Shown here piece after piece: positions 2,733 through 62,543 of a DNA stretch of 64,000 bases. The DNA is from Paraphysomonas bandaiensis. Lineage: Eukaryota; Protista; Chrysophyceae. The position numbers and the translations under genes were made by a program. Position 1 is the first letter of the stretch; each line of letters opens with the position of its first letter. The stretch lies in NCBI GenBank assembly GCA_965644295.1, contig CBFFRP010000432.1:1-64000 (forward strand), given 5' to 3'. The notes beneath the pieces were generated by a model, which had not been told where the DNA came from, made no database searches, and worked only from the letters and a program-made list of their open reading frames with translations.

Positions 2733-4486
2733 TATATGAAAGTCTGATTATTACATGAGTACGGTTGCGTACAGAAACTAGTTTATGTCTATAGACTACT
2801 AGCTAATAACTAGATTTGCTATATACTACTAGTGGCGGGCAACCGTCTCGGGACTGCTTGTGCATCGCTGCGAGCACCATGGTGCAACCGTCCCTTGTAG
2901 TGAGGTTAGTCGGGGTTCTACCTTTGGGCAATGTGTCTGGCGGGCCTGTGCCATGGATTATGTGGGGGGTGGGTGAGGCGAGATGTATATGAGAGTGCAA
3001 GTCGGTGGTGGAGATGGTGCTGGTTGTTGAGGTGGGGTTTCGGCCACAAGTAAGGAGGAGTTGTTTCCGGAGTGGTTGCGCTTGCCTCTGTCGGGTCTGG
3101 GCTCTTGCAGAGAGTTTAGTTCGTGGGGTGGATGTCGCCTGGAGTAGCTGGAGTACTTTTGGTGTCGGGTGGGTATCCTGGGGCTGGCGTTGCTTTGCGT
3201 TTGTCGGGACCGGTGTCGCCTGTGCCGTGTCTACGTTGTGGTGTCTGTGTCCCCTATTGCGAAGCATGCGGAGCCCTCCATCATATAGGGGAAGTAGGAT
3301 AGAGGCGATGGATTTTTCTAGGGCGTGGAATTGATGTTCGAGCAGTGAGCTGGATATGTGGCGTCCGAATGCGTCGGCCATTTGTGTGGCAGTAATGTGG
3401 CCGGTCCAGTAGCGCTCAACCTGGGGGGTGGTTGGGTTCCATGCCGCTTTGGCTAGTTTGGTTATGGCGGTGTAAAACCAGGGATGGGGGAGCGTGCGTG
3501 TGCGAAGTTTGTCAAGCTTATTGTGGTGTGCTTGGTGGACATCTTCACGTATGTGAATGATGTCAGGGTGAGTGCAGGTGAGAAGCATGTGCGCCATGTT
3601 GTCTGTGGGGTGTGCACAGTCTGCGCTTGTGGAAGCCGTTGTGCGATCATGTCCGGATTTTCCTTTGGCTCGGTTTCTACCCATTGCAAAGGATTTGTCC
3701 CAGACGTATGCCGTCTCGCGTATACGCTCTGCGAGGGGGATGTAGTGTTTGGAGGAGTTATGGGTACGGAGGGGATGGAGCTTGTGTGGGAGCCTTGTTC
3801 CGCTGCGTGTCCAATACTGCGGGTCTCGTTGCGTTTGTGCAGCATACATGCTATCTCGTCGGAGGGTGTATTGATGGAGGTCCCACTGGTGGTGGAGATC
3901 TGTAACGTCTCCTAGCATAGGACCGAGGTCTGTGAGGAGGTGTATATCGTATCTACGCCAGTGCCATTGACCCGTGGTGAAGAATTCTTCCAGTATGTGC
4001 GTAGCGTCAGTTGTGACAACACTGTAGTTGGAGGCTCCGAGCACTTTGTCTATAGTGTCTTCCAATCGCCGCTGGCGGCGGCGTCAGCTATATAAATGCC
4101 GTGGTCAGTGTAGGTCCAGTTGCTTTGATCTTGTGTTCTACGTTCGGGGTGCGAGCGCATCCATTGTATTGGACGCTGTTTAAGAGCTGTGGTGTGGCGA
4201 GGCATTCGTAAAATATTCCCTGGGGCTTTGTTCCGAGGGCGCGCCGTCTGTGTGAGAGGGCCTCTTTGGTCCGCGTCTGTACCGCCTGGCAGTCAGTCCA
4301 GATTGGCACGGAAGAGTGGAGTACATTGGAGAATGTCAGTGCTGCTGACATTGCAAGGGTTTCGTAGGTGTAGGCGTTGAGGCCAGGCGCTGTGTGCTGT
4401 GGTGCCGTAAGTTGTAGGATTTTGGTTTGTCTGTGACCCCAGGTGTTCTTGGGCGGGAGCCATACAATTGCAGCTCCTCCGTCGTG
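2733..4486 (-). mobile_element. 5'-truncated non-LTR (LINE-like) retrotransposon fragment with RNase H and C-terminal Zn-knuckle remnant, frameshifted
   Basis: GC-rich island flanked by the 15-bp direct repeat TGAATACTGCATATA (2718-2732 and 4487-4501). Minus-strand frames give RNase H motifs DGGAAIVW, NAYTYETLA, WTDCQAV, QWMRSHP and GIYIADAAA, then DNMAHMLLTC. Frameshifts near 4190 and 4065. The 3' end runs into (TA)n. Confidence 0.85.
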
Positions 4487-5517: not shown

Positions 5518-8500
5518 TTAACCTTTCTTGAACCGCTTCTTCTGATTCTTCTCAACTTCATTTGAAATGCTCCTCTTTTCCCCTGTGATAGTTTCTTCAT
5601 GGAGTTTAAAGAGCTTTGTAGATAACGCTTTTGTAAATATGTCGGCCGCCATATCCTTAGTCGATACATGAATCAATCTGGCTGTAGGAAACCTTCCATT
5701 TACGTGTTCCCGAACCCAGTGGTACTTTATCTGAATATGTTTTGATCTTTTGTGGTAGACTGGATTTTCTGACAGATCTTTTGCACTCTTGCTGTCCATG
5801 AAGAATGGGGTTGGCTTCGTCAATGCGAGTCCTAGCTCTCGTAACACCCCCCGTAGCCACACCAGTTCTTGCATGGCCGCATATTCTGCCATATACTCGG
5901 ACTCCATACTGGAAGTTGCAACTGTAGTCTGCAGTTTGGACTGCCATGCGATTGCTCCAGCACATAAGAATACAATATAACCGGTAGTTGAACGTCTCGT
6001 TAGTATATCACCTGCCCAGTCCGCATCACTAAATACATGTAAATCAAACTTACTCCCACTGAATTTGATTCCTTTGCTGGTGGTGCCTCTCAAATATTTC
6101 AATAAATGAATAGCTAAACGACACGATGCGTATGTAGGATTACTGCTGTATCTCGATAGTAGTCCGATTGCATAGGCGAGATCTGGTCTTGTGTGGAGTG
6201 CGAGATACAGGATTGCTCCAATAATACTACGATACGGAAATTTTGAGACCCATTCCTCCTGTTCTGATGTAAGTTCCCGTTCTGCAGCTAGTAGTTCTTG
6301 TGCATTTGATGGCAACGGAGCTTCCTTATTCTTTCTACTGTTTCCCATGACATGGTTGAATTTCTGAATCACTTTCTCCGCATACTTCGATTGATCTAGT
6401 TTGAACCAGTCTTCGCCTCTCGTGATTCGAATATTTAGGAAACTTTGGCACTCTCCCATGTCCCTCATTTCAAACGTTTGGCAGAACTTGTTCTTGACAA
6501 AAACAAGGAATTCAAAATCCACAGATGCGATAATGATGTCATCTACATACAGGAGTAATAACGTAAGTTTGCCTTGGTGCCAACGATAATATAAGCAGGT
6601 ATCTAACACGCATGATCTAAACTGCATTGACTTTATGAATTTATCGATGTGGCGATTCCACTGACGCGGTGAGGCTCGTAAACCATATAGTGCTTTGATG
6701 AGTTTAAAGCACCATCCATTGCTGAGCTCCTCATCTGGAGGTGGGTACATGTAGACATCTTCATCTAAATTTGCATAACAAAATGCAGAACTGACATCAA
6801 GCTGGTGTACATGCATATGGAACATAAAAGCAATTGCAATCACGAGCCTGATAGTTATCCCTTTTACGACCGGTGCAAATGTAGATGGCTCCTCCTCAGT
6901 TTTCTCCTGAAGATTTCCTAGTGCGACTAGTCGAGCTTTATACTTCTGTATGTTGCCTAGTATGTCACGCTTGAGTTTGTGAACATACTTACATCTGATT
7001 AATTTGACCCCAGATGGTCGACGTACTATCTTCAAAACGCCTCTTCGTAAAAGAGCTTTCTTCTCTATTCGTCTGGCTGTTCTCCATTCGTCCGCTTGAG
7101 GGGACCTCTCCGCCTCTAGAAAACTGTTCGGTTCATGGACGTGTTCATTCTCAGTACTCTCCTCTGAATCCATGACATTTACATCGGCATCCATTACCTC
7201 TATCATGTTAATTTCTCCTAACACTGAAGCATTAGCTAGCCTCCTCCGTAAACGCTTACGTTTCTCTGCATCCCTTTTAGATACTCTCTGTAGGGTATTA
7301 GTACTGTTAGAATTTATAGTATCAGTATATTCAGGTACTCCCTGAGCTGCATCTTCATCAAGTACTCCTTGAGTCATATCTTCATCAGGTGCTCCCTGAA
7401 TAATACCATGGTTAACTAGCTGCTCCTGATGGCTCTCAGGCGCTGGGATAGTGGACGTACTCCGTCCATCAGTGGTACTAGAGGCGTCCCTCGTTCCCGT
7501 ATATCCCGTGTATCCAGGCGTATTCCTTGTCATTACCTGAACATCTTCTATATGTATGGGTACCTTCTGCTCAATGTGGGTTCTCCCCGCAGTTACAAGT
7601 GACCGATAACCAACAATGACACCCTTTCTTTCTACCACTCTGGTGGTCTTGTACAACAGCCCGTCTTCATCGTCTATGTGAAAAGTCTTCACGAGATGCT
7701 GATAATCATTCACCGTCTTTGGTCTAGGTGCTGTTCGTACTCGGAGAGCGTCGATTTCTGCGTAATATTCTTCGGTGCGGGAAGGTATACTCTCATCTGT
7801 GAGTATGTGTACACACGTAATTACCTTATCGGTTGCTGGGAGATACACCTGGTATCCAACTTTATCTTCCGAATATCCCACTAGGTATCCAATCTTTGAT
7901 TTATCGTCCCAGTCCTTTCGCCTATCCGCCTTAGGTGTCAATATATAAGTTTTGCACCCCCATACTCTAAAATATTTCAAACTGGGTGGCTGACCCGTGA
8001 CATACTCATATGGGGACATGTATCCTCTGTCCGTCCTTGTAGGGAGTCTGATCAGTGTATAGCGAGCAGCATGATACGCGTCTAACCAGAATGGAACCGG
8101 TAGGCCTGACTGCAACAACATCGCCAACGCCATCTCTGATGCAGTCCTGAATTTTCGCTCCTCTACTGCATTCATTTCCGGACTATCTGTTGAAGACCAA
8201 GTATGTTTGTAGCAGCCTTGTGATCTCAAATAGCTCCTAAGTTCTTGATTTATGAGTTCTCCAGCTCCATCAGCGTGGTAGTGGTCCACTCTCAGCTTAT
8301 ATTGCCTAATCTCTCCTTCGAACACCTCTCTAAAAAACTGAATCACTTCTTCTTTAGTACGCTGGTTTACGCCTTTTACCCAGAACATCCTACTCGGGTG
8401 ATGAGTTAGTTTGATCACGTAGCGCTCATCACCTCGAGCGGGAGTATTCAGAAATACTTGCACATCAGCCGATATGTCCGGCTTGACATCCGTATCCTCC

Positions 8501-10209
8501 TTTGTGTGAAACGAAACTCTCGTAATCTTTGATCTGGCACATATGCTACAGAGACAAGATTTTTTTAATGCAGTCTTCGATAGGTGCTTCCTCTGCAGAT
8601 TTGAGCCAGTGAACAACATCCTTCTATGTGCCTCCGTTAGAGCCCCTTTGTTGAAATGGCCCATTCTCCTATGCAGCAGTTCCAGCTCGTCCTCACCAGT
8701 CCTATCGCTAAGATTTACTTCACAATTACTCGGTGTAGACACATCTGGAAGCTCCAACAGCTGCTGAGTTGGAACTGCAGTCATTCCATTCTTCATGGGT
8801 CCCTCCAGTACCAGCTCACCGGTATTACAGTCATAAATTTGGATCCCATACCACACCGTGAATCGATAGCCCATTTCGTTCAGCTTACGTCCGGAGCACA
8901 GGCATCGATTGATCTGATCTGAAATTTCTATGTCTCTCCATGCTCCACGGGAACCCACACTTGTGATATGAATCTCTGATCCCTTCTTAGATCCGTTTAT
9001 CACCTTTGATGTATTCATATGAGTGTCAAGCATGGTCACATCATTCATTAAGAACATTGATGATGAACAGCATGTATCTATGTATGTATAGTGTTCAGCA
9101 GTACCAATCATACAACATGTGTCACTTTTATCATATATATCAACAGCACAGTCATAAAGCATATTCGCTTCGGACTCCGAGTCAGACTCGGTTCCTCCTC
9201 TGCGGATATTCTCGAATGTGAAAACCTTCCCAGATTTCTGGGGTTTCTTGGTCTTTCCAGTCGAATTTCGGGGACATTCGTTCGCGCGATGGTTTTTGGA
9301 TTTGCATACTCTGCATCCTGTATATTCCTTACTGCCCGGTCTTTGTCCCTTCGTTTCCCCCTTTTTCTTCCTACATTGTTCTGTATTATGATTGTGTATT
9401 ATACCTTTCTTCGAGCAATAAGTGCACTTCCTCTTTGTAGATACTCTCTCTTTCTTTCGAGGCTTTTCAATATGATTCAGCTCCTCCGTGCTCTTGCGCT
9501 TCTTCTCTATGATTTTCCTCCCATACTTGGTGTCGTCGAACTGTTCGATACGTTTGGATAGCAATTCATATGGTACATCATCGGGCATTAAATACAGGGC
9601 ATAATTCAAACCGTCATATTCATCACTGATAATTCCCTCCTTCAGCCTACTAATTTTTGATTCTTCCGTTACCGTTTGGTTATGCGCCTGAAGTTCACGA
9701 AGAAGCAGCTCAAAACGCAGTACATACTCTTTCGCGGTCTCCCCTGGCTTCATCTCGAATGATCCAAACTGAGCAAGCAGAGCACTAATCTTGTTTTGTG
9801 TTCCCCCTTCAAAACACGATTTAAGAGTGCTAACCATCTCTCTGGCGCTGAACTTATTAACTCTTCCTTCAGCTGCCTTGAACTCCTTGTGCTTCAGATG
9901 AAACTTCTGCAGCGCCTTCGGAGATCGCTTCACCGCCTCTCTGCAGTATGAGTAAGCAATTGCATTCGCCTTCCAATACTTGTCCACCGCTTCTTTGTAG
10001 GACTTGGTCTCAAGACTATTCAGGGGTTGAATTCCGAAATCCTCTTCCTCTGGTGGCCTTTCTAGAGCCACCTCACTCTGCTCCTTTCTCATAAGGAACG
10101 TCTCAAAGTCTTCGATCCATTGTTCAACGTTGCTCTCGTCGAACCATGGAACATCAGCTCTATCCTCCTTCTCTCCTCCGCATTCGCTACCATGTTGACT
10201 AATGACCAT
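5518..10209 (-). CDS. Copia gag-pol polyprotein
   Basis: Zn knuckle CRVCKSKNHRANEC; protease YIDTCCSS; HHCC LLHRRMGH...CSIC; integrase ADVQ/HADGAGEL/NAVEER; RT KARLVA, QLDVSSAF, LYVDDII; RNase H SDADWAG/ESEY/MDSKSA. First in-frame ATG at 10209; the frame is open from the TTG at 10254. Confidence 0.97.
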   Translation of the reverse strand: MVISQHGSECGGEKEDRADVPWFDESNVEQWIEDFETFLMRKEQSEVALERPPEEEDFGIQPLNSLETKSYKEAVDKYWKANAIAYSYCREAVKRSPKALQKFHLKHKEFKAAEGRVNKFSAREMVSTLKSCFEGGTQNKISALLAQFGSFEMKPGETAKEYVLRFELLLRELQAHNQTVTEESKISRLKEGIISDEYDGLNYALYLMPDDVPYELLSKRIEQFDDTKYGRKIIEKKRKSTEELNHIEKPRKKERVSTKRKCTYCSKKGIIHNHNTEQCRKKKGETKGQRPGSKEYTGCRVCKSKNHRANECPRNSTGKTKKPQKSGKVFTFENIRRGGTESDSESEANMLYDCAVDIYDKSDTCCMIGTAEHYTYIDTCCSSSMFLMNDVTMLDTHMNTSKVINGSKKGSEIHITSVGSRGAWRDIEISDQINRCLCSGRKLNEMGYRFTVWYGIQIYDCNTGELVLEGPMKNGMTAVPTQQLLELPDVSTPSNCEVNLSDRTGEDELELLHRRMGHFNKGALTEAHRRMLFTGSNLQRKHLSKTALKKSCLCSICARSKITRVSFHTKEDTDVKPDISADVQVFLNTPARGDERYVIKLTHHPSRMFWVKGVNQRTKEEVIQFFREVFEGEIRQYKLRVDHYHADGAGELINQELRSYLRSQGCYKHTWSSTDSPEMNAVEERKFRTASEMALAMLLQSGLPVPFWLDAYHAARYTLIRLPTRTDRGYMSPYEYVTGQPPSLKYFRVWGCKTYILTPKADRRKDWDDKSKIGYLVGYSEDKVGYQVYLPATDKVITCVHILTDESIPSRTEEYYAEIDALRVRTAPRPKTVNDYQHLVKTFHIDDEDGLLYKTTRVVERKGVIVGYRSLVTAGRTHIEQKVPIHIEDVQVMTRNTPGYTGYTGTRDASSTTDGRSTSTIPAPESHQEQLVNHGIIQGAPDEDMTQGVLDEDAAQGVPEYTDTINSNSTNTLQRVSKRDAEKRKRLRRRLANASVLGEINMIEVMDADVNVMDSEESTENEHVHEPNSFLEAERSPQADEWRTARRIEKKALLRRGVLKIVRRPSGVKLIRCKYVHKLKRDILGNIQKYKARLVALGNLQEKTEEEPSTFAPVVKGITIRLVIAIAFMFHMHVHQLDVSSAFCYANLDEDVYMYPPPDEELSNGWCFKLIKALYGLRASPRQWNRHIDKFIKSMQFRSCVLDTCLYYRWHQGKLTLLLLYVDDIIIASVDFEFLVFVKNKFCQTFEMRDMGECQSFLNIRITRGEDWFKLDQSKYAEKVIQKFNHVMGNSRKNKEAPLPSNAQELLAAERELTSEQEEWVSKFPYRSIIGAILYLALHTRPDLAYAIGLLSRYSSNPTYASCRLAIHLLKYLRGTTSKGIKFSGSKFDLHVFSDADWAGDILTRRSTTGYIVFLCAGAIAWQSKLQTTVATSSMESEYMAEYAAMQELVWLRGVLRELGLALTKPTPFFMDSKSAKDLSENPVYHKRSKHIQIKYHWVREHVNGRFPTARLIHVSTKDMAADIFTKALSTKLFKLHEETITGEKRSISNEVEKNQKKRFKKG
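10181..10192 (-). other. Primer binding site, probably for initiator tRNA-Met
   Basis: TGGTAGCGAATG directly follows the 5' LTR. TGGTAGC is complementary to the ...GCUACCA 3' end typical of eukaryotic iMet tRNA. Confidence 0.8.
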
Positions 10210-10512
10210 TTTCAGATGATTAAGATCGTTGTAAGAGAAGTTTAAGTTAGTCAAACTAGATAGATTACTTTATTATGATTGTATACACAATTGTGTGTGT
10301 TGTCATGTAACACATGTCAACAACATGATAAATTATTTCGTTCATGTCAACCACTGCTCAACTTCCGTATCTTGAATCGTCATGATATAATACTTCAGTT
10401 TCACAGTTATAGCTATATAGCACCTTTGACTATTGACTACGTATTACTGTTTTTCACATTGTATTTAACGTATTCTACAGTACTATCTTAGAGAACCATA
10501 CGTATTCCAACA
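10193..10512 (-). repeat. 5' LTR of the copia element
   Basis: Identical by eye to 5032-5351; TG...CA ends. Confidence 0.97.
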
Positions 10513-28227: not shown

Positions 28228-29700
28228 ATGAATTTTGTTGAAGAGATGACTGAGGGAGCAGTGGCAGTGTCCAGGAACTACACAGAGCATAACACGGACC
28301 TGTCGTGTCGTGGGTTTGACTCTTTTCAGGATGCAGTATTCTTTCACTCTCCAGTTATCGGTCAAGGGGAATCTTTTGAAGAAGGCAGTGAGGCAAAAGC
28401 GAAGTGGTTAGCGAAGTATAATAAGAAACGTGGATATTTTCCTGCGAGAGCTTTGGCACTATTGCAGCCGTTGAGAGGAAAAGTCATACTGCCGCTGGGC
28501 ATTCCTCACCTTGAGGAGCTATGGAAGTTCTTTCAAAATCAATTAAAGCTAGATGATGATCAGGTTATATGGTTTCATCATGAACAAGGAAATACCTTTG
28601 AATATGATCTCATGAGAGACGAATCTGCCGTGGCAACACTGAAAAATATCATTGCCACCAGCGCTCCTGGTGATGCAACACGCACATTATTCTTGTTCTC
28701 GAATCGTCCTGAAATTACACCATGGGCAGAAGATCTTGGCTTTCATGTAGTGAAGGATAGTCGAAGCTGGCGTGATATATATGGGTTTAAGGACATTCTG
28801 CACCCCCGCCCTGGTGCTGAATCCTCTGTATTGCAAGATATCACCATTAATTGTGGTGTTGAAATGCCTGTACCACGAGGATACGTCTGCTCTAATACTG
28901 CTGAGCTAATGCAAGCTGTGGACTTAATGCGCACTCGCACAAGGAGTGGTGGTAGTCAGGATCTTGTCACGGATGTTCTCCTTAAGCCTGTAAGTGGATC
29001 AGATGGGGACGGTATCGAATTTTATTCTCTTAGCGATACTAAGGCCTTCGAAGAATACCGTTTTTCAATGGGGGAGATTTTGTTGGAGGAAAAGTTGAAC
29101 TTAGAGAGATATCCGGATGGATCTGTAATGTCTATTGTGACCCACTATTTTGGTGATAAGCTCTTAGGTCCCTCGTGCGATCAACTCCTCGGCAGTGCTA
29201 CCAGTAGCACTGCATTCAATGGAAATATATTTCCATCAGCTATTTCCCGCCCCCTGCGAAAGCAGTGCGAGGAAGTGGCGGAGGCGATCATGAAAGTGAC
29301 TTTACCTCAGGGTCCTGGGGGATTCGATTTCCTATTCCAGGATGGGAAACCATACCTGGTAGACGTAAATGCTGGCAGGTTCAATGGGGGTATGTACCCA
29401 AAAGCTTTCCATAAACAGTACGCATCCCGACAAAGTGCATATGTCTCATTCAAACACGTTCCCAATTGTTCAGTTGACGAGATGTGGGAGGTACTCAAGA
29501 GGCACAATATGGATTTCATTCCTATTCTTCCCTCAGATATCTCGGACGCTAATGGCGAATCGGATGATCCCAGACGCGGCACATATGGCGTATTTCCTCT
29601 TGTACACTTGCCTGGAAACTTTGGTTCTTATCTGGCTATTGCACAAACAAGAGAGGAAGTATTGCAACTAAAAGATAGATTTCTTGAATTCAGATTTTAA
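28228..29700 (+). CDS. Intronless ATP-grasp ligase with pre-ATP-grasp-like N-terminus (PGM1-like)
   Basis: 490-aa ORF with MPVPRGY, VLLKPVSGSDGDGI, ILLEEKL, FNGNIFP and GPGGFDFL...YLVDVNAGRFNGG. Confidence 0.85.
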   Translation: MNFVEEMTEGAVAVSRNYTEHNTDLSCRGFDSFQDAVFFHSPVIGQGESFEEGSEAKAKWLAKYNKKRGYFPARALALLQPLRGKVILPLGIPHLEELWKFFQNQLKLDDDQVIWFHHEQGNTFEYDLMRDESAVATLKNIIATSAPGDATRTLFLFSNRPEITPWAEDLGFHVVKDSRSWRDIYGFKDILHPRPGAESSVLQDITINCGVEMPVPRGYVCSNTAELMQAVDLMRTRTRSGGSQDLVTDVLLKPVSGSDGDGIEFYSLSDTKAFEEYRFSMGEILLEEKLNLERYPDGSVMSIVTHYFGDKLLGPSCDQLLGSATSSTAFNGNIFPSAISRPLRKQCEEVAEAIMKVTLPQGPGGFDFLFQDGKPYLVDVNAGRFNGGMYPKAFHKQYASRQSAYVSFKHVPNCSVDEMWEVLKRHNMDFIPILPSDISDANGESDDPRRGTYGVFPLVHLPGNFGSYLAIAQTREEVLQLKDRFLEFRF

Positions 29701-50959: not shown

Positions 50960-52000
50960 CTACAAATCTATATCCATTTTATCTAATAAAACACTATCGT
51001 CGTCAATCGTTCTTGCTAGAACATATGTATCTTCCATTGTACTTCGTGTGTCTAAACTCACTACGATAGTGCACAGAAACACTAACACACAGCCTAAGAT
51101 CTCACTTCCTCCAAGAGAGTCTCCGAAGATAAAGTACGCCAGTGCTGCTGTGAATGGGGCCTCTAGAGTAATGAACAATATTCCTCGAGATGAGCCCATA
51201 TGCTTGACACCATGAGTTTCAAGTAACCATGCCACAGACTCAACAAATCCAACTGAAAAAGTACAAAAAATATCTGTCCAATGTAACTGAAAAATAATAG
51301 AAAAAATACTGTGATCCGAGGAATAGCAAAATAAAGCAAGCGTCGCCAAAAGAACAATGCATGAGACGCCTAAGGCACCTTGAGTGAGCCTCGAAGATTC
51401 TACGTAGCTCGACCCAAGCTCTATAGTTATTGTATAGATACTATAAAAGAATGCTGCACCAAGGGCTATTCCATCGTATAATGTGGTCACTGAGCCACAC
51501 TCAGTGACTGTTTTGCCACCACATCCAACCAAAAAGTATGTGCCAATAAGACTGACACAGACAGAAAGCCAACCAACATACCCTAACTTCTTACTAGTTG
51601 GAACAAACTGTCCAATGCACGGTGTTATTACTACACATAGGCACAGCAAAAAACTAAACTTTGCTGTGTTCAAACGAGCCAGCGCTAAGCCGCTGCAAGT
51701 CATTCCCAGTGCATTTGCAATTCCGCAGACAACTGACCAAAACAAACAGCTTCTATTGCTGCTATGAATACCTGTACCGTGGTGACCGTCACTGCTGCGA
51801 AAGCATACACGCATAATCTTGAGGTTTACACATGCAAATATAAAAGCCAGTAAATTTCTAACGCTATTGAACATAAACACATTAAAGCCATCTGTCAGTG
51901 CAATTTTCGCAATGACTATTGCTAAAGCAAACAGAAATGGCGATAACAGAAGAGATATTTCACCTCTCATTACGACGTCGGATCCACAACGCCCCAACAT
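50960..52000 (-). CDS. EamA/DMT-superfamily transporter
   Basis: About 10 hydrophobic helices in two repeats: FNSVRNLLA, AKFSFLLCLCVVITP, SSRGILFITLEAPFTAALAYFIFGDSL. Confidence 0.88.
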   Translation of the reverse strand: MLGRCGSDVVMRGEISLLLSPFLFALAIVIAKIALTDGFNVFMFNSVRNLLAFIFACVNLKIMRVCFRSSDGHHGTGIHSSNRSCLFWSVVCGIANALGMTCSGLALARLNTAKFSFLLCLCVVITPCIGQFVPTSKKLGYVGWLSVCVSLIGTYFLVGCGGKTVTECGSVTTLYDGIALGAAFFYSIYTITIELGSSYVESSRLTQGALGVSCIVLLATLALFCYSSDHSIFSIIFQLHWTDIFCTFSVGFVESVAWLLETHGVKHMGSSRGILFITLEAPFTAALAYFIFGDSLGGSEILGCVLVFLCTIVVSLDTRSTMEDTYVLARTIDDDSVLLDKMDIDL

Positions 52001-52380
52001 AAGATCTCATAGCTAGTAAAGCCACAGTGTATGGAGACAGCAGCAACTATTCCTCCATGATGATGATGTCCGGTCGCAGAAACACATTTTTTTGTTCCTG
52101 CACTGCTGATGATGATGTCCGAACACAATATACTGCTATGTAGCTCCTCTGCTGTAGTATATGAAACACAACGTAATCGATCCAATCAGTGGAATCTGAC
52201 GAAATTTTGCGTTATTCCATTCGAAAGGAATATTTTCATAACATCGCGCAGTATCAACCACACTGTTACTCCGCTCACCTCATAGCTAACTTAGAGTCAC
52301 TCATTGGATGCACTGATTGTCTGATTGTCTGATTGTATGACATAAAGTACACTGTAGTCAGTCATTGTAACTTATATAGT

Positions 52381-53613
52381 ATGCCATCGAAAGATATCGA
52401 GAAGAGACGAGAACAGATATATAAGAGTTTCGACCTAGAGACGTATTTCAATGGCAATATTCCATCCCGAGTAAAGATATGTGAGGTCGTCTTGTTTCCC
52501 CCATTAGTGTGGTGTTTGTGATGTGGTCTATAGGTGGGCCCTCGAGACGGTCTACAGCATGAGGAAACACTGGTGTCAGTGGAAGCTAAAGTGAAGTTAA
52601 TTGAGATGTTGGCATCAGCGGGTCTGTCCCATATTGAGGTTGGATCATTCGTGAGTCCTAAGTGGGTTCCACAGATGGCCAACACGCTAGAGCTTTTCAA
52701 TCACTTGAATGATATCAATTCGACGGCCTTGACAATGTCAGTTCTTACTCCCAACATGAAAGGTCTCAGTTATGCAATGGATGTACAAGTTCCAGAGGTA
52801 GCCATCTTTGCAGCAGCCTCCGAGGAATTTTCTAGAAGGAACATAAATTGCTCTATCGAGGAGTCTTTGGTCAAGTATAGCACAGTGTGTTCCGTAGCAC
52901 TACAACAAGGTGAGAGCTGTTGTTTAATTTGAAATTCGCTGATGTTGACTGTGAATCAGGCATACGAGTGAGAGGCTATGTGTCCTGCGTATTAGGTAAA
53001 GACTTGCATTCGGGGTGTACTGCATTCATTATTTATCGACTGATAGGGTGTCCCTACGAAGGAGAGATTAGCAATGAAAAAGTGATGCGGATTACGAGGG
53101 AGCTTCTTCGCATGGGGTGTTACGAAGTATCGCTCGGAGACACTGTTGGATTAGGTACTCCGCTTACCACGCACCGGCTGCTTCGGCACTTAAACGATAA
53201 TAGTATACCTCTGGAACGGTAGGATAGTTTGAAACTGTTCGTATGTATATATAATCCGATTTGCCTCGTGCACATACTTTGCGAATTCTGTATTGTTTTA
53301 CGCATGATTTGTCAGACTGGCGGTGCATTTCCATGATACTCATAGCACTGCGATACCTAACATTCTAGTGGCTCTGCACCATGGTGTTGCAGTTATCGAT
53401 TCCTCAGTCTCCGGACTTGGTGGATGCCCATATGCTGATGGGGCGACTGGAAATATAGCTACTGAGGATGTTGTCTATCTCCTCGATAAACTGGGCATTG
53501 AGTGTGGTGTGAGTCTCAGTAAGCTTCTTGAGGCGTCACGATTCATTGATGCACTTCTTCGGAGACAGACTGCTGCGAAACTTATCTCGGGCAATTTGGG
53601 TAGAACGATTTAA
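52381..53613 (+). CDS. HMGCL: Hydroxymethylglutaryl-CoA lyase (5 exons)
   Basis: VKICE|[29 protein letters not shown]|[34 protein letters not shown]. Confidence 0.96.
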
Positions 53614-54270
53614 ATTATCCCGTATAACTCTTGGCATTGTGCGTTTTAACTGTCACACTGCTATAACCGTGCGCTCACTGTGATATTGTTGCTGTGTATA
53701 ATATATTAGGGCTAGGAAACAATATATTGCAATATATTGTGACGTTGGCATCCGTTTATAAGTAATACGATATCATGGGAGGTGGTCCACAATCTTTTCC
53801 CATAATGCCATCAAAAATCTAGTTTAATGAATATATTATATTATTTATAAAGAGTTCACTATACCACAAATAAACAATAAACCCAAGTACATGATAGTAA
53901 CCACGTGATAACTACGCACGACGTACTAAAGCAAAATTTTCTACAAGTCATCGTCCGAATTAAGAGAGCTGGGATTAGGGTTGACAAATGGTTGTGACGA
54001 TATGGTTATTCACATTGAATAGCATAATTGTTCATTGATTGTTCAGTTGTTCAGTACTAGTAGGCGTAAAAGGAGTACTACCTGACCAAACTACGACCAA
54101 CACAATGACACAACACTGAACGTTAGAATCACTATTAAACACTATTCAATTTTCTTATTAGAAACTCATACGCATTTGAGAAAAATTGTTTCAATTTCCA
54201 GACAGAAAACTAAAACTGAAGCGAACTCCTAAGAGCAGAATTATCATGCCACGAAAAAATCGCATGCACT

Positions 54271-57200
54271 CTACGACAGAAGAGTCTTAGCGGTTTGAAT
54301 TGTAGCAGTGGTAGCAGCAGGCAACACAGTCCTACTCGTCACACGAAGGACGTTAGATTGGGCATTGATTTCAATCTTGATAAGGCATCCCAGTGTAATC
54401 TTCTCTCCAGAGTTCTCCTTGACAGTTCCTGTGCGGAGAGAGGCAGACCCATAAACGACATTATCAGAACCCATAGGAAGACCATCAGACACTCTGTGAA
54501 ACTTCAGAGCCTGAGGTTAACAATAATTACGTTAGGAACGCACACTATATACGTAGAACACCACTTACAGAAGAGAGGGCTTTCGCAACGCTATCCTTGT
54601 CCACTGTGTGGGAAGGCCGGAACTCTTCAACACCTTCCTGTCCTGGTCCGACCAGCATGTTCCACCTTGAGTTGAAATCTGCAAAATTGAGAGCGAGCGG
54701 TTCGTTAAAAGACATCACGGTGACAGGTAAGTTGAAGGTGTTGTTCCTGAGCCTATTATCAGATGCTCTGTAGGATACAGTCAAGGTAGGTCCAGGTGAA
54801 ACCGGTGTCATGCACTCTACCATGATTTGCTGATCAGTTTGTCCCAATGGATTTATATTAGCCGCCAGTGAACCCAATTGTTTACGAAGCAGGCCAGCGG
54901 GGTCATTCATTTCTGTCGCAAGTTCAGTGATATTGGCATCCCCTGATTTATTGCGGAAGAAGAGTGTCAACCTAGCCTGCGATCCCCGAACCTCAAGCTT
55001 GCAGGCAATCTGAAGGATTCCATCATCATACAGAGGTCCCACTCCGCTCAGAGTAGCAGCCTGTAACCAAGCCTTGTGCTGTGCTACTTGAGCATCAGTT
55101 AACTGTACAGTTTGAGATTTCTCTCCCTGTGAGTTTCCGAATCCAAAGGAATCGTCGTTAAACGCATTGAACTGATTCATATTTGCGTCCGGGGGAGGAG
55201 GAGGAGCAGATTCTCCGAAAAAGTCCAAATCGTTAGCGTTAGTGGCAGGGGGAGCAGGTGGAGCGCTCGCCCTGGGAGAGTCGTCAGTATCAAATCCGAG
55301 CAAATCACCTTCTTGAGTCTGGTGCTGCTGATGGGGGGCATCCTCTTCCCAATCCTCTGCTGCTGCGTGTTTCATTTTGTGGTGTTCTTCGGCCGCTTCA
55401 TCCATACCATCCTCTAGTAGCTCCAGCTGAATGTGCATAGCAGTCATAAATTTCTCGATAAAAAACTCAATGGCAGTGGCTAAACGCACGGCCTCTTTGG
55501 TTCGGAAGATGAACTCCATGCGCTTACTGAATGTTGCATCAGAGAACACGTTCACCAACAGTGCTAACTTGCCGTTCTGCGACAGCAGAGACCACTTATA
55601 AAAGTCGGTATAGACCCAAAAACACTGTTGTCTGAGATTGAAACTTCCAGGGGGATCTGGGGCGACCACGCAAACAGCATTTGCGGAGACCATCACACTT
55701 GTAGAATAATCCATCGCATTGAAGACCCCCAGAGGATCAACTTTAGCCTTGACTTTGAACTCTATGTCCTCATCAGGAATGATAGCCACATCCTCGTCCA
55801 CTGCGCGAGTGAGCATTTGCAGGCACTTGTAGGCGTTTTCCTGCGTCTCTGCGCAAAGAGTCCACTCTCTCTCCGTAGTCTGTATGTCGAATGAATGCGG
55901 TGGGGTGTCCGATGATTCTTGCTTGTTCGAACCAGGTCTGATGAATGTCGTCTTTGCCAAGTCAACGACGTTTCGCTGGACATGTTCAGTTGTGTACATG
56001 GGGCACTCGAGTAGGTCGGAGTAATAGACGAGGAAATGGCCCTGGGAGGTGCTGTACAAAACAAAGTACCGCTTAATCCACTGCTTTGTCGGACCTACAC
56101 CAACACCACCCTTTTTGAGTAGCCACCCTTGATGCTTTACAATTGATCGCCAATGATACTTGACCTTAGTCTCGTGAGGAAGGGGCTGAGGCTCGGAGGA
56201 CAAAGAGAAGCCGAGTGATGCCCGTCTGAACAGAGTACAGAGTATTTAATAGTAACATAAAAGTATTTTCAGTAACCTACCGTTGTACGCCAGATACAGC
56301 ACCCTTCTTGGAGGCCACTATAGAGGTGCGATGCCCTGTCTTAACCATTTGCCCGGCACGCACAACAAGGCCATCGCTGTCAACGATGTCAATTTGACCT
56401 TGAGGTGCCTCAGGGGCTGGGACCTCACCCGACAATGTGTGAATAGTCTCCAACGGCCGTCCATGGGTAGAACCAAGCTTAACAGACCGCCCATTGGCAA
56501 CCTGGTACTTATTCCAAAAAAACTCCATGGTATGTTTCACGTCACGTATGTGCTTAAACCCGAGGTAGAGGTCATCCTTCTTCGGAGCTTGATCAACGAA
56601 GTGGAAGAATATGCCACTGACGTCCTTGTCAATTCGTGTCTCTCTGTCCTCCACAGTCCAGTCACTCAACTGGTCGAATTGAATCTCCATGTCTGGCCCA
56701 TTGATGCCACGCGGAAGGAATACCATCTTGGACTCCGTGACAAGAAACACTGATTCTGTAGTCCACCGATTGGTATATTCTGAGTTGCCTCGAACATGAG
56801 TCACTGGAAAAGTGTTATGTCCTTCGAAAATATGCTGAACGGCAAGCTCAATACGCCTAGAACTCCCAGGAGGACATGGCATATAGCTACCCTGGTGGCG
56901 TTTCTCAGCCATTTCTCGCATTTGTGCGAGGGGGGGAAGCTTGCCGGCAGGAATGCGAGAAATATTGGGTCTCTTTCGCTGAAAAGGCTTTGGCTTGGTA
57001 GAACCTGCGAACATGCCTACGTAGTGAAATGGAGGAATTTTGGCACCTTGACGGGTGGATGATATATTTGTGTAGCGAAGTTTAAGCTCGTGTTCCAGCT
57101 CGACGGAGGTTGGTACGTGCAGAATAACGAAACTATCTTCAGTCTCGGGACGCTTCATAACTAATTTGACTTCACAAAGTGCATGATCCCATCCCACTTC

Positions 57201-57569
57201 AGCAACCTGTACAATATTATAAGTACCATTGGAACACAATAATTTAATGATCTATATAACCTCAGTGTAAGAAATGGCAACTTTCTTGCGGTCAGCAGAG
57301 GCAAGAGCGTCGACCAATATTTCAAAAGAATCCGACTGACATGTCAGTTGAACCTCTTTATTCTCTCCTTTCATTTCCCCAAAAGTAGACATCATCGGTC
57401 CATGTGTTGTATGCAAAAATGCCTTGTAGGAGTGATCGAAATGAGCCAACCTGCTAGCGGCAGCATCATTCTCATCTCCATCGCCCTGTTAATTATATAT
57501 AATATAAATATAGAGAGATTATCATTAATAAAAGCTGATACGCACCAATGCAGATCCTTGATTACCCAT
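54271..57569 (-). CDS. Myristoylation-motif, multi-PH-fold protein with C-terminal alpha-adaptin appendage (5 exons, 1023 aa)
   Basis: Exons 57569-57546, 57485-57261, 57206-56281, 56225-54569 and 54510-54271 splice in frame (3072 nt). Start MGNQGS; PH HQGWLLKKGG...WIKRYFVL; ear motifs GPLYDDGILQIACKLEVRGSQARLTLFFRNK, LPVTVMSFNEP...FNSRWNML, GCLIKIEINAQSNVLRVTSRT. Confidence 0.9.
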
Positions 57570-58463
57570 CCTTAATATCCAGTCACAGAATTATTGAGTG
57601 ACACAAGGAAATCACTAACGAACCCCGTAAAGTATGAAATAATGATGCAAGGTTATAATAGCTAAAATCCTGCAGTGTTGTAGTAGCACGTAGGTATGAT
57701 ACAGTATGTATGTATGTATGTATGTGCATGTGTTGTGATGTTGCACGCATGCTGCTGATGAGCGATGATGTCTAGATGTTGCGTGAGGTAGATACCTCCA
57801 TATGTAAAAAAAAACATGGTGTGACAAATTTTACATCAACTCTGTGTCTACAAGAAACTTCTGTAGATCCCAAAATACGTATGCTTACGTATTTTATGAG
57901 ATATCCAGATCAAAAAATAGCGATTTTTACAGATTCTGCCACCTTCAAGTTCAAAATCGTTGAAATCAGGAAGACAAAAACGGACAGTACCCGGACTTCG
58001 CACGTGGTCACCCACCGTACTACTAACCGGGCCAGATGCAACTTAACTTCCGCGAGCGGAACGAGAGCGGGTGCGGTTTGCATTGTATGACCGTCCATGC
58101 TGAAGTCGGTATGTTTTGATCAATAGGAATACATACAGTATCAAACATCACTTCTAGATTATTCTCGTGAAATTCCATACACATACATATAAAATTATAC
58201 TCAACTGTTTTTGACACCAAAATCATACTGCGGCAGTATACGAGTGTACTGTACTGATATACTCCCATAGTGTTGAATACACACATATACTGCTGTAGGC
58301 TGTACATATACATCCTTAAAGCAGTCGATAAGATTATATACCTGCATACACGATGGCGAACACACCCATGACACATCCACACTAGTGCATTGGGTGAGAA
58401 CCCGAGCCATTCACATCATCTATTGGATCTAATTAATGCTGAGTGGGATTTACGTGTAATCGA

Positions 58464-61400
58464 ATGGAATCGAGTCGTATTGCGGATTATTTCGTAGTTA
58501 TCGGGTGCTCTCCCAACTCACTCACTCCACAGCCTTCATACGACCAACCATTCCCTACGAATGATCCATTTCATATGACTTATACGCCAGAAATCATGGA
58601 TCGATATCCTCTGGAGGACAGGAGCGATATATCTCTGCCCACTGGACTGACTCTGTTTTGTCTTCCAGATGGTATGCATATTTCAACCACAGCACGATCA
58701 CCTTCTTTCTTTTCATTTGTTCAGACTTCAGAATCAGGTGCTCAGCTCATTGGATGTTGTTTGACATTTCACGAAGAACTAAATGACAAACAGCGTGCGT
58801 CTTTGGGTGCTTTGTTGGACAGTACAGACAATTCAGATATTTCATCTACAGCGCTTAAAGATATGAAGCTTTACCTGCCACGATGTTTGTGTTTGCTGAG
58901 TCAATGGCCATTCGTTTCCTCGTTCAAGAAGTTTCTCTGCCATATATATCGACTATCCTTGACCCCATGTGTTGTTCCCGTCGAGCGGTACATATGCAAT
59001 TTTCTTGATGACGTTCCTGCACCCCCACCTGGCCGAGTGGAAGTGTCGTACTTTATAGGTAGCGAAGTCGTCCTCTTCAAGCGGCCTCCTGCCAACGAGC
59101 CCAACGCATGGTCCACTATGCCAATGACGCCTCTATTCGAGTGTTTATCTCTTCAGAATGTTGTTGCTCTCTTTTCGGCGGTGTTGTGTGAGCGCCAGAT
59201 CGTCTTTGTGTCCTCCCAGTACTCGCTCTTGACTTCATGTGCGGAGAGCATTGTGTCGCTTATGTACCCCCTGAAATGGACCCATGTCTATATCCCGATA
59301 CTTCCTCGTAGGCTGTTAGGTATGTCTTACTCCGCATGGCGCCATTGTGTTGCTAAATGTCATTTTTATAACTACTGTAGGTGTACTGGGTGCACCCCTA
59401 CCAATAATGGTGGGCATCCACTCTTCCTTTATTTATGACCCTGCTCGTGCCAAAGCTTCATTCGCGGATGCGTCCTCGTCCTCACTGCCACCCTCCGCCG
59501 CTTGCTACGATGGATACGCGTCTTTGTCCAGCGAGAGTGTAAAGGTGTATTTGGACGAGAACAGAATTGATTTTGGGTCCCTGGGCCGTCCTCCTGATCT
59601 GCCAGAGGGCAGACACAAGAAGTTACTCAACGATCTTACGTAAGTCTTCAACCTCATCTGTTGAGTGCGCGTAATTTGTGTATTGCATCATGGGGGTGCA
59701 TCCATTTAATACTTCATGTCTGGATGTAGTGTGATGGCGCCGGCGTTCAATATGCGCCTGCCTGATTGGGAGAAAAACCAGCTTCCATTCTACGATTCGG
59801 CCTTTGAAATGTCAGTTCGACCTGATCTTGCAGATGGGACGCTGGCCAACAAGGACAAAGTTGACGAAAAGGGAGTTAGGGCGACTTTTCTCAAGTTCTT
59901 TGTGAGCATCATGCGAGACTATAAACAGTAAGAACCTTGTAGTAGTAGTTGTTGTTGTATTCTATCTTACAGTAGCGCTTGTACCACAGATACTTGATAA
60001 CCCCAACCCAGAGTGACCCATTCCCGCTGACTAAGTTTAGAACCGCGGATTATATAAACGGTATAGTTCTCCTGTTCGAATGCCTATGGTAAATTACTTC
60101 CTGTACCTGCAGATCACCCTTCTGACTGGACCCCATTACTGGAGGTTCTTCTCCGGTCACAGGCATTCTATCAGTTTGTGGATGCCCGTGTGTCGCCGAG
60201 TGGTTGGACCGATCCTGGTGTGTTTACTCATATTTAACTTTTTCTTCTCTCACTATGCTTGAAGAGATACTATTTTTCGATGAGTCGATAGAAGCCAAGA
60301 TAAATCGGTATACGTTCAGATTGCACAAGCGCGATACACCATTTTTATTGGACGATTCGAACAAGCACTGCAAGACAGTAGTTGCTCCTACTGTTGATGC
60401 TGATGGTCTCGATGTATTGAGTGATGTTGACGAGGTGGAAGCGGCGACAGCAGGAAACACATGTGTAACCCGTGATGGTAAAGGACGCAGAGTGTATATA
60501 TACAGCTCATTCCCTTCTTTAAAGTACGTGTTTCGACAAATACTAACAATTTAATGACTAATATGAAATCGCAGCCCTAAGTTGTATATAAAGAAGCAGA
60601 ACAATAATTCACAACCACGACCAGTAGCAAGTGCTCATATTGCCCAGCCTCGTCTGTCGACCCTCGGCAGACTGAAGCGCGCAAATGTACTTCGCATTGG
60701 AAGCTCTCGCAAGATGGCAGATGTCGACTCAAGCAGTCCAGAGTCATGTGTTTATAGCACTTTTCTTATTATGTTTTCGAGAGTTGTGTCGTGTGGGCTG
60801 TCACCTCCCACTGTACGTCGAGCACCACCTAGTCTATCGCAAGTGCTAAGTAAACTCAATATGACTTCACCGACAAATCTAGATGGTCGTAAGTCCGACC
60901 CGATGACAACATCGTTCACAGATAATTCTTCGGATCTGGCGGATAAAACGCTGTCAAGAGTTGATGGTGATGTCGAAGCCATCCAGCAAGCTTCCGTCAG
61001 TAAGAACTCTCCAGCTTGTGGAGATGGCGCTGGTGTGGAACTTAATCCTCCTATATCTGAGCTTTCTATACACACCGATTGCGATACGTGCCCAAGCCCG
61101 TCGAACGTGACAACAGACATGTCATCCAATGAAGCACCATCACCCAAAAATGGTACAACCTTTTCATTACTGACTGCACCTGGAGATATGATTTCGTCTG
61201 GTACTGACTCCGGAGGATTCGTTAATTACAATGATGACATACGCGAGGAGTATGTGACGATCGCTCGGGCGGCTATAGATGTTAGTTACTTTATCGTTGT
61301 TATCCCCCATAAATGTGAAGTAATGTGCTTGTATTATTCAGATAGCATTTGAGCTTTTCTCAACGATGGAGAGTAATGGATACTCTGTGGACGAAGATGT

Positions 61401-62543
61401 ATATAGGTAAGCCACGATATACTAATTGACTGTGACATCAGTAATAGAATGTAATTTGTAGAGCACTTACGGATGCTTGTGCTGTTTGTGGCGCGGGTGA
61501 ACGGTATTTTTTCCGATTTACCCTAAATTTAATGGAGTTGACTTTCTGTCAGGGCTGTGGATGTCCTGGAGTCAATGACAGCCGCCGGAATGCTACCAGA
61601 TATGCAGATAACCAGTGGCGTAGCACGGGCTATTTCATTTTCATCCAGCACAAGCCAGGGAGACGAGGAGGCTTCCGGACTAGGCCTTTTACCTGTAACC
61701 CCAAAAGACGTGTCCGAGGCTGCGGTTAACAGAGACTTCAGGCGACTCAGAAAGTACTGTACTGCTAGTGACCAGCATATGGCAAGCCCAGTGATACCCA
61801 GTCGAGATGCATCGAGGGATCATCGTATGCACTCTTCTCCCGCTCGTGTGACGGTTTTCACCAATGAAAAGGAATCTGAACGGAATTTTTTCGGGTTTAA
61901 AAAGTCGCGAGCGAAATCATCTTTGAGGGCGACAGCTGCGGACAACGGAATCAAGTTAAGGACGGCGTCCGATTCAATGCAATCCGATGCATGTATGAGT
62001 GTAATGAGTATTGGTACAAGACAAAATTTTTTGTCGTCATCACGTTTTGCGACTCAGGTGTTAATAGCAGATCGAACTCTAGATATGATATATCCCAATC
62101 TTTTGATTGATTTAAACAACCCCAATGGGACAGCGTGTCCGAAGTACTCGTGTGGAAAGTCGCTTAATATTTTGCAGATCATTGCCGCCTTCGAGCCAGA
62201 TGCAAATAAATACACTGTGAAATGTCCATACTGTGGTACTGAATATGTCCCACGCTTTACAGTGCACTCGTCATCTGATGATTGGACTGGAAGCGAAGGT
62301 GAAGGAAGTCTTCTTTGGTGTGAGCTGCTGAGTCCTTGGGTCTTACAAAAAGAAGTTTTAAATGTCATCACAGGAAGTGGGGTCGAAACACTATTATCTT
62401 CGACTTTCAGAAACTCGTCCCTGAATATGCAGTACGCGGTTATATTTTGGAACCTAATTATATATTTTCGCCTGTACGGTTTACCGTATGCCTTCCTGAT
62501 AACTGAAAAGTCAAGTATGGCATTTCTAATCCCATTAGATTAG
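58464..62543 (+). CDS. DENN-domain Rab GEF, DENND4/CRAG-like (multi-exon)
   Basis: uDENN RIADYFVVIG and LFCLPDG; cDENN ERQIVFVS...YPLKWTHVYIPILP; dDENN FLRSQAFYQFVDAR; PPR-like AFELFSTM...YRALTDAC; C-terminal CPKYSC/CPYC...LLSPWVLQKE...IFWNLIIYF. Confidence 0.92.

What the first reader, a model, noticed from the sequence alone, without database searches (positions are those of the whole stretch)
54271..57569. Candidate new monomeric clathrin adaptor: myristoyl motif + up to four PH/PTB folds + clathrin box + AP-2 alpha-ear, no adaptin trunk
Seen: the spliced protein begins MGNQGS (G2/S6 myristoylation consensus, in a 24-nt first exon the ORF track misses) and has one canonical PH domain. An acidic linker follows with LLGFD (55289-55303, fitting the clathrin box L-phi-x-phi-D/E) plus DLDFF and FNDDSF motifs, and the protein ends in both subdomains of an alpha-adaptin appendage. 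Established: the alpha ear normally sits on the AP-2 alpha HEAT trunk, and GGAs are monomeric adaptors that reuse the gamma ear. Inference: three further beta-rich, helix-capped segments (two upstream of the PH, one FERM-F3/PTB-like downstream: FWVYTDFYKW...FIFRTKEAVRLATAIEFFI) are PH-superfold modules. That would make this a GGA-like but alpha-ear-based adaptor. I do not know a described protein with this architecture.
Basis: partly seen in the sequence, partly recalled or inferred. Interest (0 to 1): 0.85.

Follow-up and report, generated by a model that had tools for sequence, protein, structure and literature searches.

The report
Ochrophyte four-PH alpha-ear clathrin adaptor
Golden algae, brown algae and their relatives share an apparently undescribed protein that combines a membrane anchor, four PH-type folds, a clathrin-binding motif and the 'ear' of the AP-2 complex in one chain, and it probably helps build clathrin-coated uptake vesicles.

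Summary
The gene is real. Five exons on the minus strand give 1023 aa; single RNA contigs from two studies contain all four junctions. The C-terminus is an AP-2 alpha ear (profile vs PDB: alpha 6e-47, beta2 1e-3) with no adaptin trunk, and an intact AP2A lies elsewhere in this chrysophyte genome. Confident AlphaFold models support four PH-superfold domains: two N-terminal, a canonical PH, and a PTB/FERM-F3-like domain. The architecture is conserved in chrysophytes, synurophytes, pelagophytes, dictyochophytes, Parmales and a brown alga. Family linkers are enriched in clathrin boxes (86/131 vs about 7 shuffled) and DPF/DPW (110/131 vs about 10). The ear keeps the platform pocket but not the WxxF sandwich-pocket residues. 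Trunkless alpha-ear proteins are already known in alveolates (KAE, KIC4/KIC5), but none is described with PH folds, and no paper on this family was found. Best reading: an ochrophyte monomeric endocytic adaptor and hub, made by grafting the AP2A hinge and ear onto a PH/PTB module. It resembles ARH/Dab2 plus an ear more than a GGA. Function is inferred, not tested.

The parts
57546..57569 (-). Exon 1 (aa 1-8): start codon and N-myristoylation consensus MGNQGS
   Evidence: Spliced in RNA contigs; no upstream ATG; Gly2 in most full-length homologues
57261..57485 (-). Exon 2 (aa 9-83)
56281..57206 (-). Exon 3 (aa 84-392)
   Evidence: 121 relatives among 1.84 billion representatives
54569..56225 (-). 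Exon 4 (aa 392-944)
   Evidence: 182 homologues
54271..54510 (-). Exon 5 (aa 945-1023 and stop); poly(A) site near 54135
57057..57443 (-). Domain 1 (aa 23-133): PH-superfold, PTB/FERM-F3-like; spans intron 2
   Evidence: Homologue P0121 model pLDDT 87.5; VIA Z 11.1, rmsd 1.9 to SNX17 FERM; Z 11.0 to IRS-1 PTB; no Pfam match
56958..57023 (-). Strongly conserved basic segment between domains 1 and 2 (aa 145-166, containing KPKPFQRKRP); role unexplained
   Evidence: Holds most of the near-invariant columns of alignment A1
56493..56822 (-). Domain 2 (aa 212-321): PH-superfold
   Evidence: topology; VIA Z 10.7 to myosin VIIa FERM, 9.0 to Vps36 PH
55784..56143 (-). Domain 3 (aa 420-539): canonical PH domain, with conserved basic residues in strands 1-2
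   Evidence: Pfam PH 2.6e-12; VIA Z 14.9, rmsd 1.8 to TAPP1 PH; conservation
55421..55768 (-). Domain 4 (aa 545-660): PTB/FERM-F3-like; conserved residues cluster at the strand 4-5 junction and the C-terminal helix
   Evidence: Model pLDDT 92.4; VIA Z 13.3 to myosin VIIa FERM, 12.1 to IRS-1 PTB; Foldseek best Dok7 and IRS-1 PH-PTB, 1e-8; Atlas IRS-type PTB 0.91
55094..55420 (-). Acidic, Pro-rich linker (aa 661-769)
   Evidence: motif enrichment across 131 homologue linkers
55289..55303 (-). Clathrin box LLGFD (aa 700-704)
   Evidence: Fits L-phi-x-phi-[DE] (PMC5694535); a strict form lies mostly 27-50 aa after domain 4 in 81/131 linkers vs 0.5 shuffled
54725..55093 (-). Alpha-ear sandwich subdomain (aa 770-892); Gly725 and Gly742 positions (mouse numbering) replaced
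   Evidence: Pfam 9.7e-13; PDB alpha ears only; residue table
54274..54724 (-). Alpha-ear platform subdomain (aa 893-1023; spans intron 4); F909, W913, E991, R1000, R1004 correspond to mouse F836, W840, E907, R916, R920

Best explanation
A single-copy, expressed member of an ochrophyte-wide family of monomeric clathrin-coat adaptors, made by fusing the hinge and ear of AP-2 alpha onto a four-PH-fold module. Shown: gene structure, transcription, alpha-type ear without trunk, conservation of architecture and motifs, coexistence with intact AP2A and clathrin. Predicted with high confidence: four PH-superfold domains. Inferred mechanism: the N-myristoyl group (or an amphipathic N-terminal peptide in some lineages) and the basic PH domain bind a phosphoinositide-rich membrane, most likely the plasma membrane. 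The PTB-like domain 4, and perhaps domains 1-2, bind short peptide signals in cargo tails or partners. The clathrin box and DLL-type motifs recruit clathrin terminal domains. The ear platform pocket gathers DPF/DPW/FxDxF accessory proteins. Because most members carry DPF motifs in their own linker, they can also dock on AP-2 ears or on each other, or fold back on their own ear as an off state. It would act beside AP-2 as a cargo-specific adaptor and second hub in clathrin-mediated endocytosis.
For: RNA contigs join all exons; 17 synonymous vs 5 non-synonymous differences, p 9e-8 against random change. Ear is alpha, not beta. Folds. Same architecture in Paraphysomonas, Ochromonas, Chrysophaeum, Aureococcus, Pelagophyceae CCMP2097, Pteridomonas, Tetraparma and the brown alga Discosporangium, with partial matches in Synura and Mallomonas; the N-terminal tree groups members by class. 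Linker motifs vs shuffles, of 131: clathrin box 86 vs 6.7, DP[FW] 110 vs 9.8, DLL-type 119 vs 12.5, WxxF 0 vs 2.2. Platform pocket kept in 51 ears: F836 49, W840 50, R920 49, E907 43. Genome holds AP2A with ear, clathrin heavy chain, EH-domain and NECAP-type genes. Motif definitions: PMC5694535. KAE shows a detached alpha ear can work at endocytic sites (PMC10105704).
Against: No binding, localisation or knockout data. A PH fold does not show lipid or cargo binding, and identity to solved PTB domains is only 7-14%. The 131 linkers are mostly chrysophyte-like and not independent; a strict clathrin box is seen in chrysophytes and Parmales, while pelagophytes and dictyochophytes mostly have looser DLL-type motifs. 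The window protein lacks DPF. One related clade has no ear (P0176). Gly2 is not universal.
Confidence: 0.62

Rival explanations
1. A coat scaffold or hub rather than a cargo adaptor, like KAE at the micropore: it holds accessory proteins at a fixed uptake site or at another clathrin-coated membrane (endosome, Golgi, contractile vacuole), and its PTB-like folds bind partner proteins, not cargo tails.
For: KAE is a trunkless alpha-ear scaffold at stable endocytic structures; PH-superfold domains often bind proteins, e.g. NECAP PHear (PMC3794858); a permanent lipid anchor suits a fixed site.
Against: Domain 4 conservation concentrates at the strand 4-5 junction and C-terminal helix, where PTB domains bind peptides (groove position from my own knowledge); KAE lacks folded domains besides the ear; the family occurs in walled brown algae as well as phagotrophs.
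Confidence: 0.2
2. A signalling docking protein of the IRS/Dok/FRS2 type (lipid anchor plus PH-PTB) that binds receptor tails and uses the ear and clathrin box only secondarily, to route signalling complexes into endocytosis.
For: Best Foldseek matches of the PH3-domain 4 pair are Dok7 and IRS-1 PH-PTB tandems; Atlas features point to IRS-type PTB; an earless relative with an inserted PDZ domain exists.
Against: Overall tandem TM-score is only about 0.36, so domain order is shared but not packing; the earless relative still has a DPF/NPF-rich tail typical of endocytic proteins; the linker's conserved motifs are coat motifs.
Confidence: 0.1
3. A negative regulator or decoy: the free ear competes with AP-2 for DPF-bearing accessory proteins and the linker competes for clathrin, tuning pit size or number.
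For: Ear and ear-binding motifs lie in the same chain in most homologues; NECAP regulates AP-2 by competition.
Against: Four conserved folded domains and a membrane anchor are more than a decoy needs.
Confidence: 0.07
4. An artefact: two neighbouring genes, or a truncated AP2A, joined by the gene model.
For: JGI names ear-containing fragments of this family 'AP-2 complex subunit alpha'.
Against: One transcript contig spans all exons; single-ORF full-length homologues exist; the true AP2A is on another contig.
Confidence: 0.01

Closest known systems
KAE (TGME49_272600) and Plasmodium KIC4/KIC5
   Same: Large protein ending in an adaptin ear with no Adaptin_N trunk; KAE derives from a duplication of the AP-2 alpha ear and coexists with AP2A (PMC10105704; PMC10718435).
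   Different: KAE is reported only in alveolates, has coiled coils and no other conserved domain, and binds Eps15 through the WxxF sandwich pocket. KIC4 has VHS-GAT. This family is ochrophyte, has four PH folds and a clathrin box, and lacks the two glycines of the WxxF pocket in all 51 ears. Orthology of the ears could not be tested.
AP-2 alpha adaptin (AP2A)
   Same: Both ear subdomains; platform pocket; a platform insertion shared with Saprolegnia and own-genome AP2A but absent from mouse; stramenopile AP2A hinges also hold a clathrin-box-like motif.
   Different: No trunk, so it cannot join the heterotetramer; ear only 26% identical to this genome's AP2A ear and 34.5% to Saprolegnia's.
GGA adaptors
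   Same: Monomeric plan: folded N-terminal modules, hinge with clathrin box, reused adaptin ear.
   Different: GGAs are VHS-GAT-hinge-gamma ear (single subdomain) at the TGN; here PH/PTB folds and a two-subdomain alpha ear.
PTB-type clathrin-associated sorting proteins (ARH, Dab2, Numb, GULP)
   Same: PTB-like fold (VIA Z 10-12 to ARH, Dab2, GULP) followed by a disordered region with clathrin box and AP-2-ear-binding motifs.
   Different: Those have one PTB and no ear of their own, and are animal proteins; no sequence similarity detected.
IRS-1 / Dok7 PH-PTB docking proteins
   Same: Canonical PH directly followed by an IRS-type PTB fold.
   Different: Different packing (TM about 0.36); no ear or clathrin box in IRS/Dok; probably convergent domain order.

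Membership tests
AP-2 alpha adaptin | Adaptin_N trunk | tested here: not met
   No Adaptin_N in any exon or full-length homologue; none at this locus in the genome scan
AP-2 alpha adaptin | Alpha-type two-subdomain ear | tested here: met
   (alpha 6e-47, beta2 1e-3)
AP-2 alpha adaptin | Platform pocket around W840 | tested here: met
   W840 50/51, F836 49/51, R920 49/51
AP-2 alpha adaptin | WxxF sandwich pocket (G725, F740, G742; residue roles from my own knowledge, source papers not held) | tested here: not met
   Gly is not among the six commonest residues at either position in 51 ears (Ala 30 at 725; Arg/Lys 38 at 742); F740 13/51
KAE | Alpha ear without trunk | tested here: met
KAE | No other conserved domain; coiled coils | tested here: not met
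   Four PH-superfold domains
KAE | Ear falls in the alveolate KAE clade | not testable with these tools
   No KAE sequence was retrieved; the ear tree holds only three AP2A rows
KAE | Association with Kelch13 at the micropore | not testable with these tools
   Needs cell biology; K13 is reported only in myzozoans
GGA | VHS and GAT domains | tested here: not met
   No Pfam match; N-terminal half is beta-rich PH fold
GGA | Gamma-type single-subdomain ear | tested here: not met
   Alpha platform present; no gamma ear among PDB matches
PTB-type sorting adaptors (works-like comparison) | PTB-like fold plus clathrin box and ear-binding motifs | tested here: met
   (DPF absent from the window protein itself)
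PTB-type sorting adaptors (works-like comparison) | Binds cargo tail signals and clathrin | not testable with these tools
   Needs binding assays

The most novel reading that the evidence does not exclude
A one-chain substitute for the whole AP-2 complex: membrane anchor, cargo recognition, clathrin recruitment and accessory hub in one polypeptide, able to start coated pits without AP-2 and to network through its own DPF motifs binding neighbouring ears. It would be an ancient ochrophyte invention, independent of KAE and GGA, reading a cargo signal of its own.
Probability: 0.25. Interest if true: 0.82.

Novelty: new variant of a known kind. Interest (0 to 1): 0.63.

Why it matters
Endocytosis in ochrophytes (brown algae, bloom-forming pelagophytes, bacterivorous chrysophytes) is almost unstudied at the level of adaptors. 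This family is a conserved, lineage-wide candidate hidden under labels such as 'PH domain-containing protein' or mis-named AP-2 alpha. With GGAs (gamma ear) and KAE (alpha ear, alveolates) it would be a further case of an adaptin ear leaving its complex to build a new adaptor, and its front end converges on animal PTB adaptors. It gives concrete tests: the clathrin box, the W913 pocket and the domain 4 groove.

Tried and rejected
Alternative splice choices: all 15 others break the frame. Gene fusion artefact: rejected. Beta-type ear, suggested by a clathrin box before an ear: rejected. Compensation for an earless AP2A: rejected, own AP2A has a full ear. KAE-style division of labour, with the new protein keeping the WxxF pocket: not supported, both ears in this genome deviate there. 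Link to phagotrophy: not supported, brown algae and synurophytes have homologues. Internal duplication among the PH folds: profile comparison found only the overlap of the two alignments. Paralogues in the genome: none. Metagenome scan for more AP2A ears returned six family loci and one ear-only fragment, so the ear tree is thin. Atlas search with a full-length homologue gave nothing usable; the earlier-findings search was empty. The primary structural papers on ear pockets were not held. A 167-row tree did not finish; the ear tree is the quick version. Literature searches found no description of this family; most subscription journals are not covered.

Full report
Gene model. The region holds a five-exon gene on the minus strand: 57569-57546, 57485-57261, 57206-56281, 56225-54569, 54510-54271, with GT-AG introns of 60, 54, 55 and 58 nt. 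Of 16 donor and acceptor combinations only this one gives an open frame, 1023 aa. One 3281-nt contig in run X1 (RNA by the tool's guess) and one 3219-nt contig in poly(A) metatranscriptome X3, from different studies, each skip all four introns and run from the 5' UTR to the 3' UTR; X10 shows the poly(A) tail at 54135. The 5' UTR has in-frame stops and no ATG, so MGNQGS is the N-terminus. The RNA contigs differ from the window at 17 synonymous and 5 non-synonymous sites, against 23% synonymous expected at random. Following the operators' note, the joined protein was not sent to any search or folding tool: searches were made exon by exon or with natural full-length homologues, and the joined model was used only in local scripts to map positions and compare fetched sequences.

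Organism and range. The nearest named homologues are from Paraphysomonas, so this is most likely a chrysophyte genome. The gene is single-copy. Named homologues come from Paraphysomonas, Ochromonas, Synura, Mallomonas, Aureococcus, Chrysophaeum, Pelagophyceae CCMP2097, Pteridomonas, Tetraparma and the brown alga Discosporangium. The brown algal locus shows the whole plan: MGNVAG start, N-terminal module, PH, domain 4, linker and ear. 168 fetched proteins, with redundancy, carry N-terminal module, PH-PTB and ear together. A tree of the four-domain region groups members by class, which fits vertical descent from an early ochrophyte (quick method, unrooted). No named diatom, eustigmatophyte or oomycete member appeared, but most hits are unnamed, so absence is not shown.

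The ear. Pfam finds Alpha_adaptinC2 (9.7e-13) and a weak Alpha_adaptin_C in the last exon; homologues reach 3e-14 for the platform. A profile of 54 family ears matches solved alpha ears at 6e-47 and beta2 ears at 1e-3. There is no trunk. The genome's own AP2A, trunk and ear, is on contig C425, so the protein is an addition to AP-2, not a split of it. Its ear is 26% identical to that AP2A ear and 34.5% to Saprolegnia AP2A; the three AP2A rows stand apart from the family at support 80, which argues against a recent duplication but is a thin test. Family ears share with the stramenopile AP2As a platform insertion that mouse lacks, and both stramenopile AP2A hinges hold a clathrin-box-like motif. 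The simplest history is therefore duplication of hinge plus ear from a stramenopile AP2A (inference). In 51 ears the platform pocket is kept (mouse F836 49, W840 50, E907 43, R916 36, R920 49). The sandwich pocket is not: position 725 is mostly Ala, 742 mostly Arg or Lys, and F740 is kept in 13. That the platform site centres on W840 and binds DPF/DPW/FxDxF, and that the sandwich binds WxxF, is from PMC5694535; the roles of the other individual residues are from my own knowledge.

The four PH folds. Residues 1-400 of homologue P0121 (58% identical over exon 3) modelled at pLDDT 87.5 as two seven-stranded, helix-capped domains. Domain 1 aligns with SNX17 FERM (Z 11.1, rmsd 1.9, 95 residues), IRS-1 PTB (11.0) and other PTB domains; domain 2 with myosin VIIa FERM (10.7) and Vps36 PH (9.0). 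Neither has a Pfam match. Window bases 55400-56176 modelled at pLDDT 92.4: a canonical PH (Z 14.9 to TAPP1), then a PTB/FERM-F3-like domain (Z 13.3 to myosin VIIa FERM, 12.1 to IRS-1 PTB, 11.9 to ARH PTB). Foldseek ranks the Dok7 and IRS-1 PH-PTB tandems first, with low overall TM, and the Atlas gives IRS-type PTB. In a diverse subset of 21 sequences, conservation in domain 4 centres on the F-W-x-Y-T-D-x-x-K-W stretch and the C-terminal helix, the region where PTB domains bind peptides (own knowledge; surface exposure was not checked). A basic segment between domains 1 and 2 is the best conserved part of the N-terminal half and is unexplained.

Anchor and linker. Most complete N-termini have Gly2, in chrysophytes, pelagophytes and the brown alga; others start with short basic, hydrophobic peptides such as MNRLFG or MKSLFG, which look like an alternative membrane anchor (inference). 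In 131 linkers, the clathrin box occurs in 86 (6.7 in shuffles), a strict form in 81 (0.5), DP[FW] in 110 (9.8), DLL-type in 119 (12.5), NPF in 21 (3.9) and WxxF in none. These sequences are related and mostly chrysophyte-like, so the counts overstate independence; the strict box is also present in Parmales, whereas pelagophytes and dictyochophytes mostly show looser DLL-type motifs. The window linker has LLGFD and DFF but no DPF, and FNDDSF is not a strict FxDxF.

How it probably works. The parts map onto the four jobs of an endocytic adaptor: membrane binding (lipid anchor, PH), peptide recognition (PTB-like folds), clathrin recruitment (linker) and accessory-protein gathering (ear platform). 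Clathrin heavy chain, EH-domain and NECAP-type genes are present in the genome. Since most members carry both the DPF ligand and its pocket, they may dock on AP-2, associate with each other, or self-inhibit. All of these functional steps are inferred. I put the adaptor and hub reading at 0.62, a KAE-like scaffold or non-surface coat role at 0.2, a signalling docking role at 0.1 and a decoy role at 0.07.

Comparison with what is known. Trunkless ear proteins exist: KAE, reported only in alveolates, has an alpha ear, coiled coils and no other conserved domain, and binds Eps15 through WxxF (PMC10105704 and its preprint); KIC4 and KIC5 are the Plasmodium cases (PMC10718435). This family fails the tests for AP2A (no trunk), GGA (no VHS, GAT or gamma ear) and KAE (different front end, WxxF pocket not kept); common origin of its ear with KAE could not be tested. 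Databases call members 'PH domain-containing protein' or 'hypothetical', and ear fragments 'AP-2 complex subunit alpha'. Paper searches found no description, within the library's limits.

Verdict. Observation confirmed; interpretation largely right on architecture, less so on 'GGA-like' and on the novelty of a free alpha ear. A new variant of a known kind: an undescribed, conserved ochrophyte adaptor family. Interest 0.63.

Noticed in passing
window 55823 (aa 526): The window encodes Cys where all four RNA runs and nearly all homologues have the conserved PH-domain Trp; possibly an assembly error or a rare allele.
   Followed up: partly
G000:C425:140724-143658 (L023): The genome's own AP2A ear also deviates at the WxxF sandwich pocket (Thr, Ala, Val, Asn at mouse 725, 727, 740, 742) while Saprolegnia AP2A keeps it; WxxF binding may be lost from both ears in this lineage.
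   Followed up: partly
G000:C168:31971-32315 (L022 about 3960-4300, minus): A close, broken copy of the AP2A platform subdomain with a stop and a frame change; looks like a pseudogene fragment.
   Followed up: partly
P0176 / P0256 (L047, L048); P0188 (L049): Relatives in 67-68% GC contigs without an ear: P0176 has a PDZ domain inserted in domain 1 and a DPF/NPF-rich tail; P0188 ends near its contig end, so its lack of an ear is unsure. Lineage unknown; either ear loss or a pre-fusion form.
   Followed up: partly
P0135, P0152, P0170, P0267, P0298 N-termini: Gly2 is replaced by short basic, hydrophobic starts in several lineages, suggesting a swapped membrane anchor.
   Followed up: no
window 58443-62543 (+): A uDENN-DENN gene (Rab GEF family) starts head to head with the adaptor gene, under 1 kb away; no sign of conserved linkage in the few homologue loci seen.
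   Followed up: partly
window 52333-53613 (+) and 50960-52000 (-): HMG-CoA lyase-like gene and EamA transporter downstream; ordinary.
   Followed up: yes
window 5518-10254 (+ coordinates, minus strand): Copia-type LTR retrotransposon with one open gag-pol frame of 1578 aa.
   Followed up: partly
G000:C80 and C214; C145 and C247: Two clathrin heavy-chain loci and two similar-scoring Adaptin_N loci; paralogues or haplotigs, not checked.
   Followed up: no
window 28228-29700 (+): A 490-aa uninterrupted ATP-grasp ORF, family not resolved.
   Followed up: no
L026 5058-6158: An ArfGAP gene lies directly downstream of a pelagophyte-like homologue.
   Followed up: no
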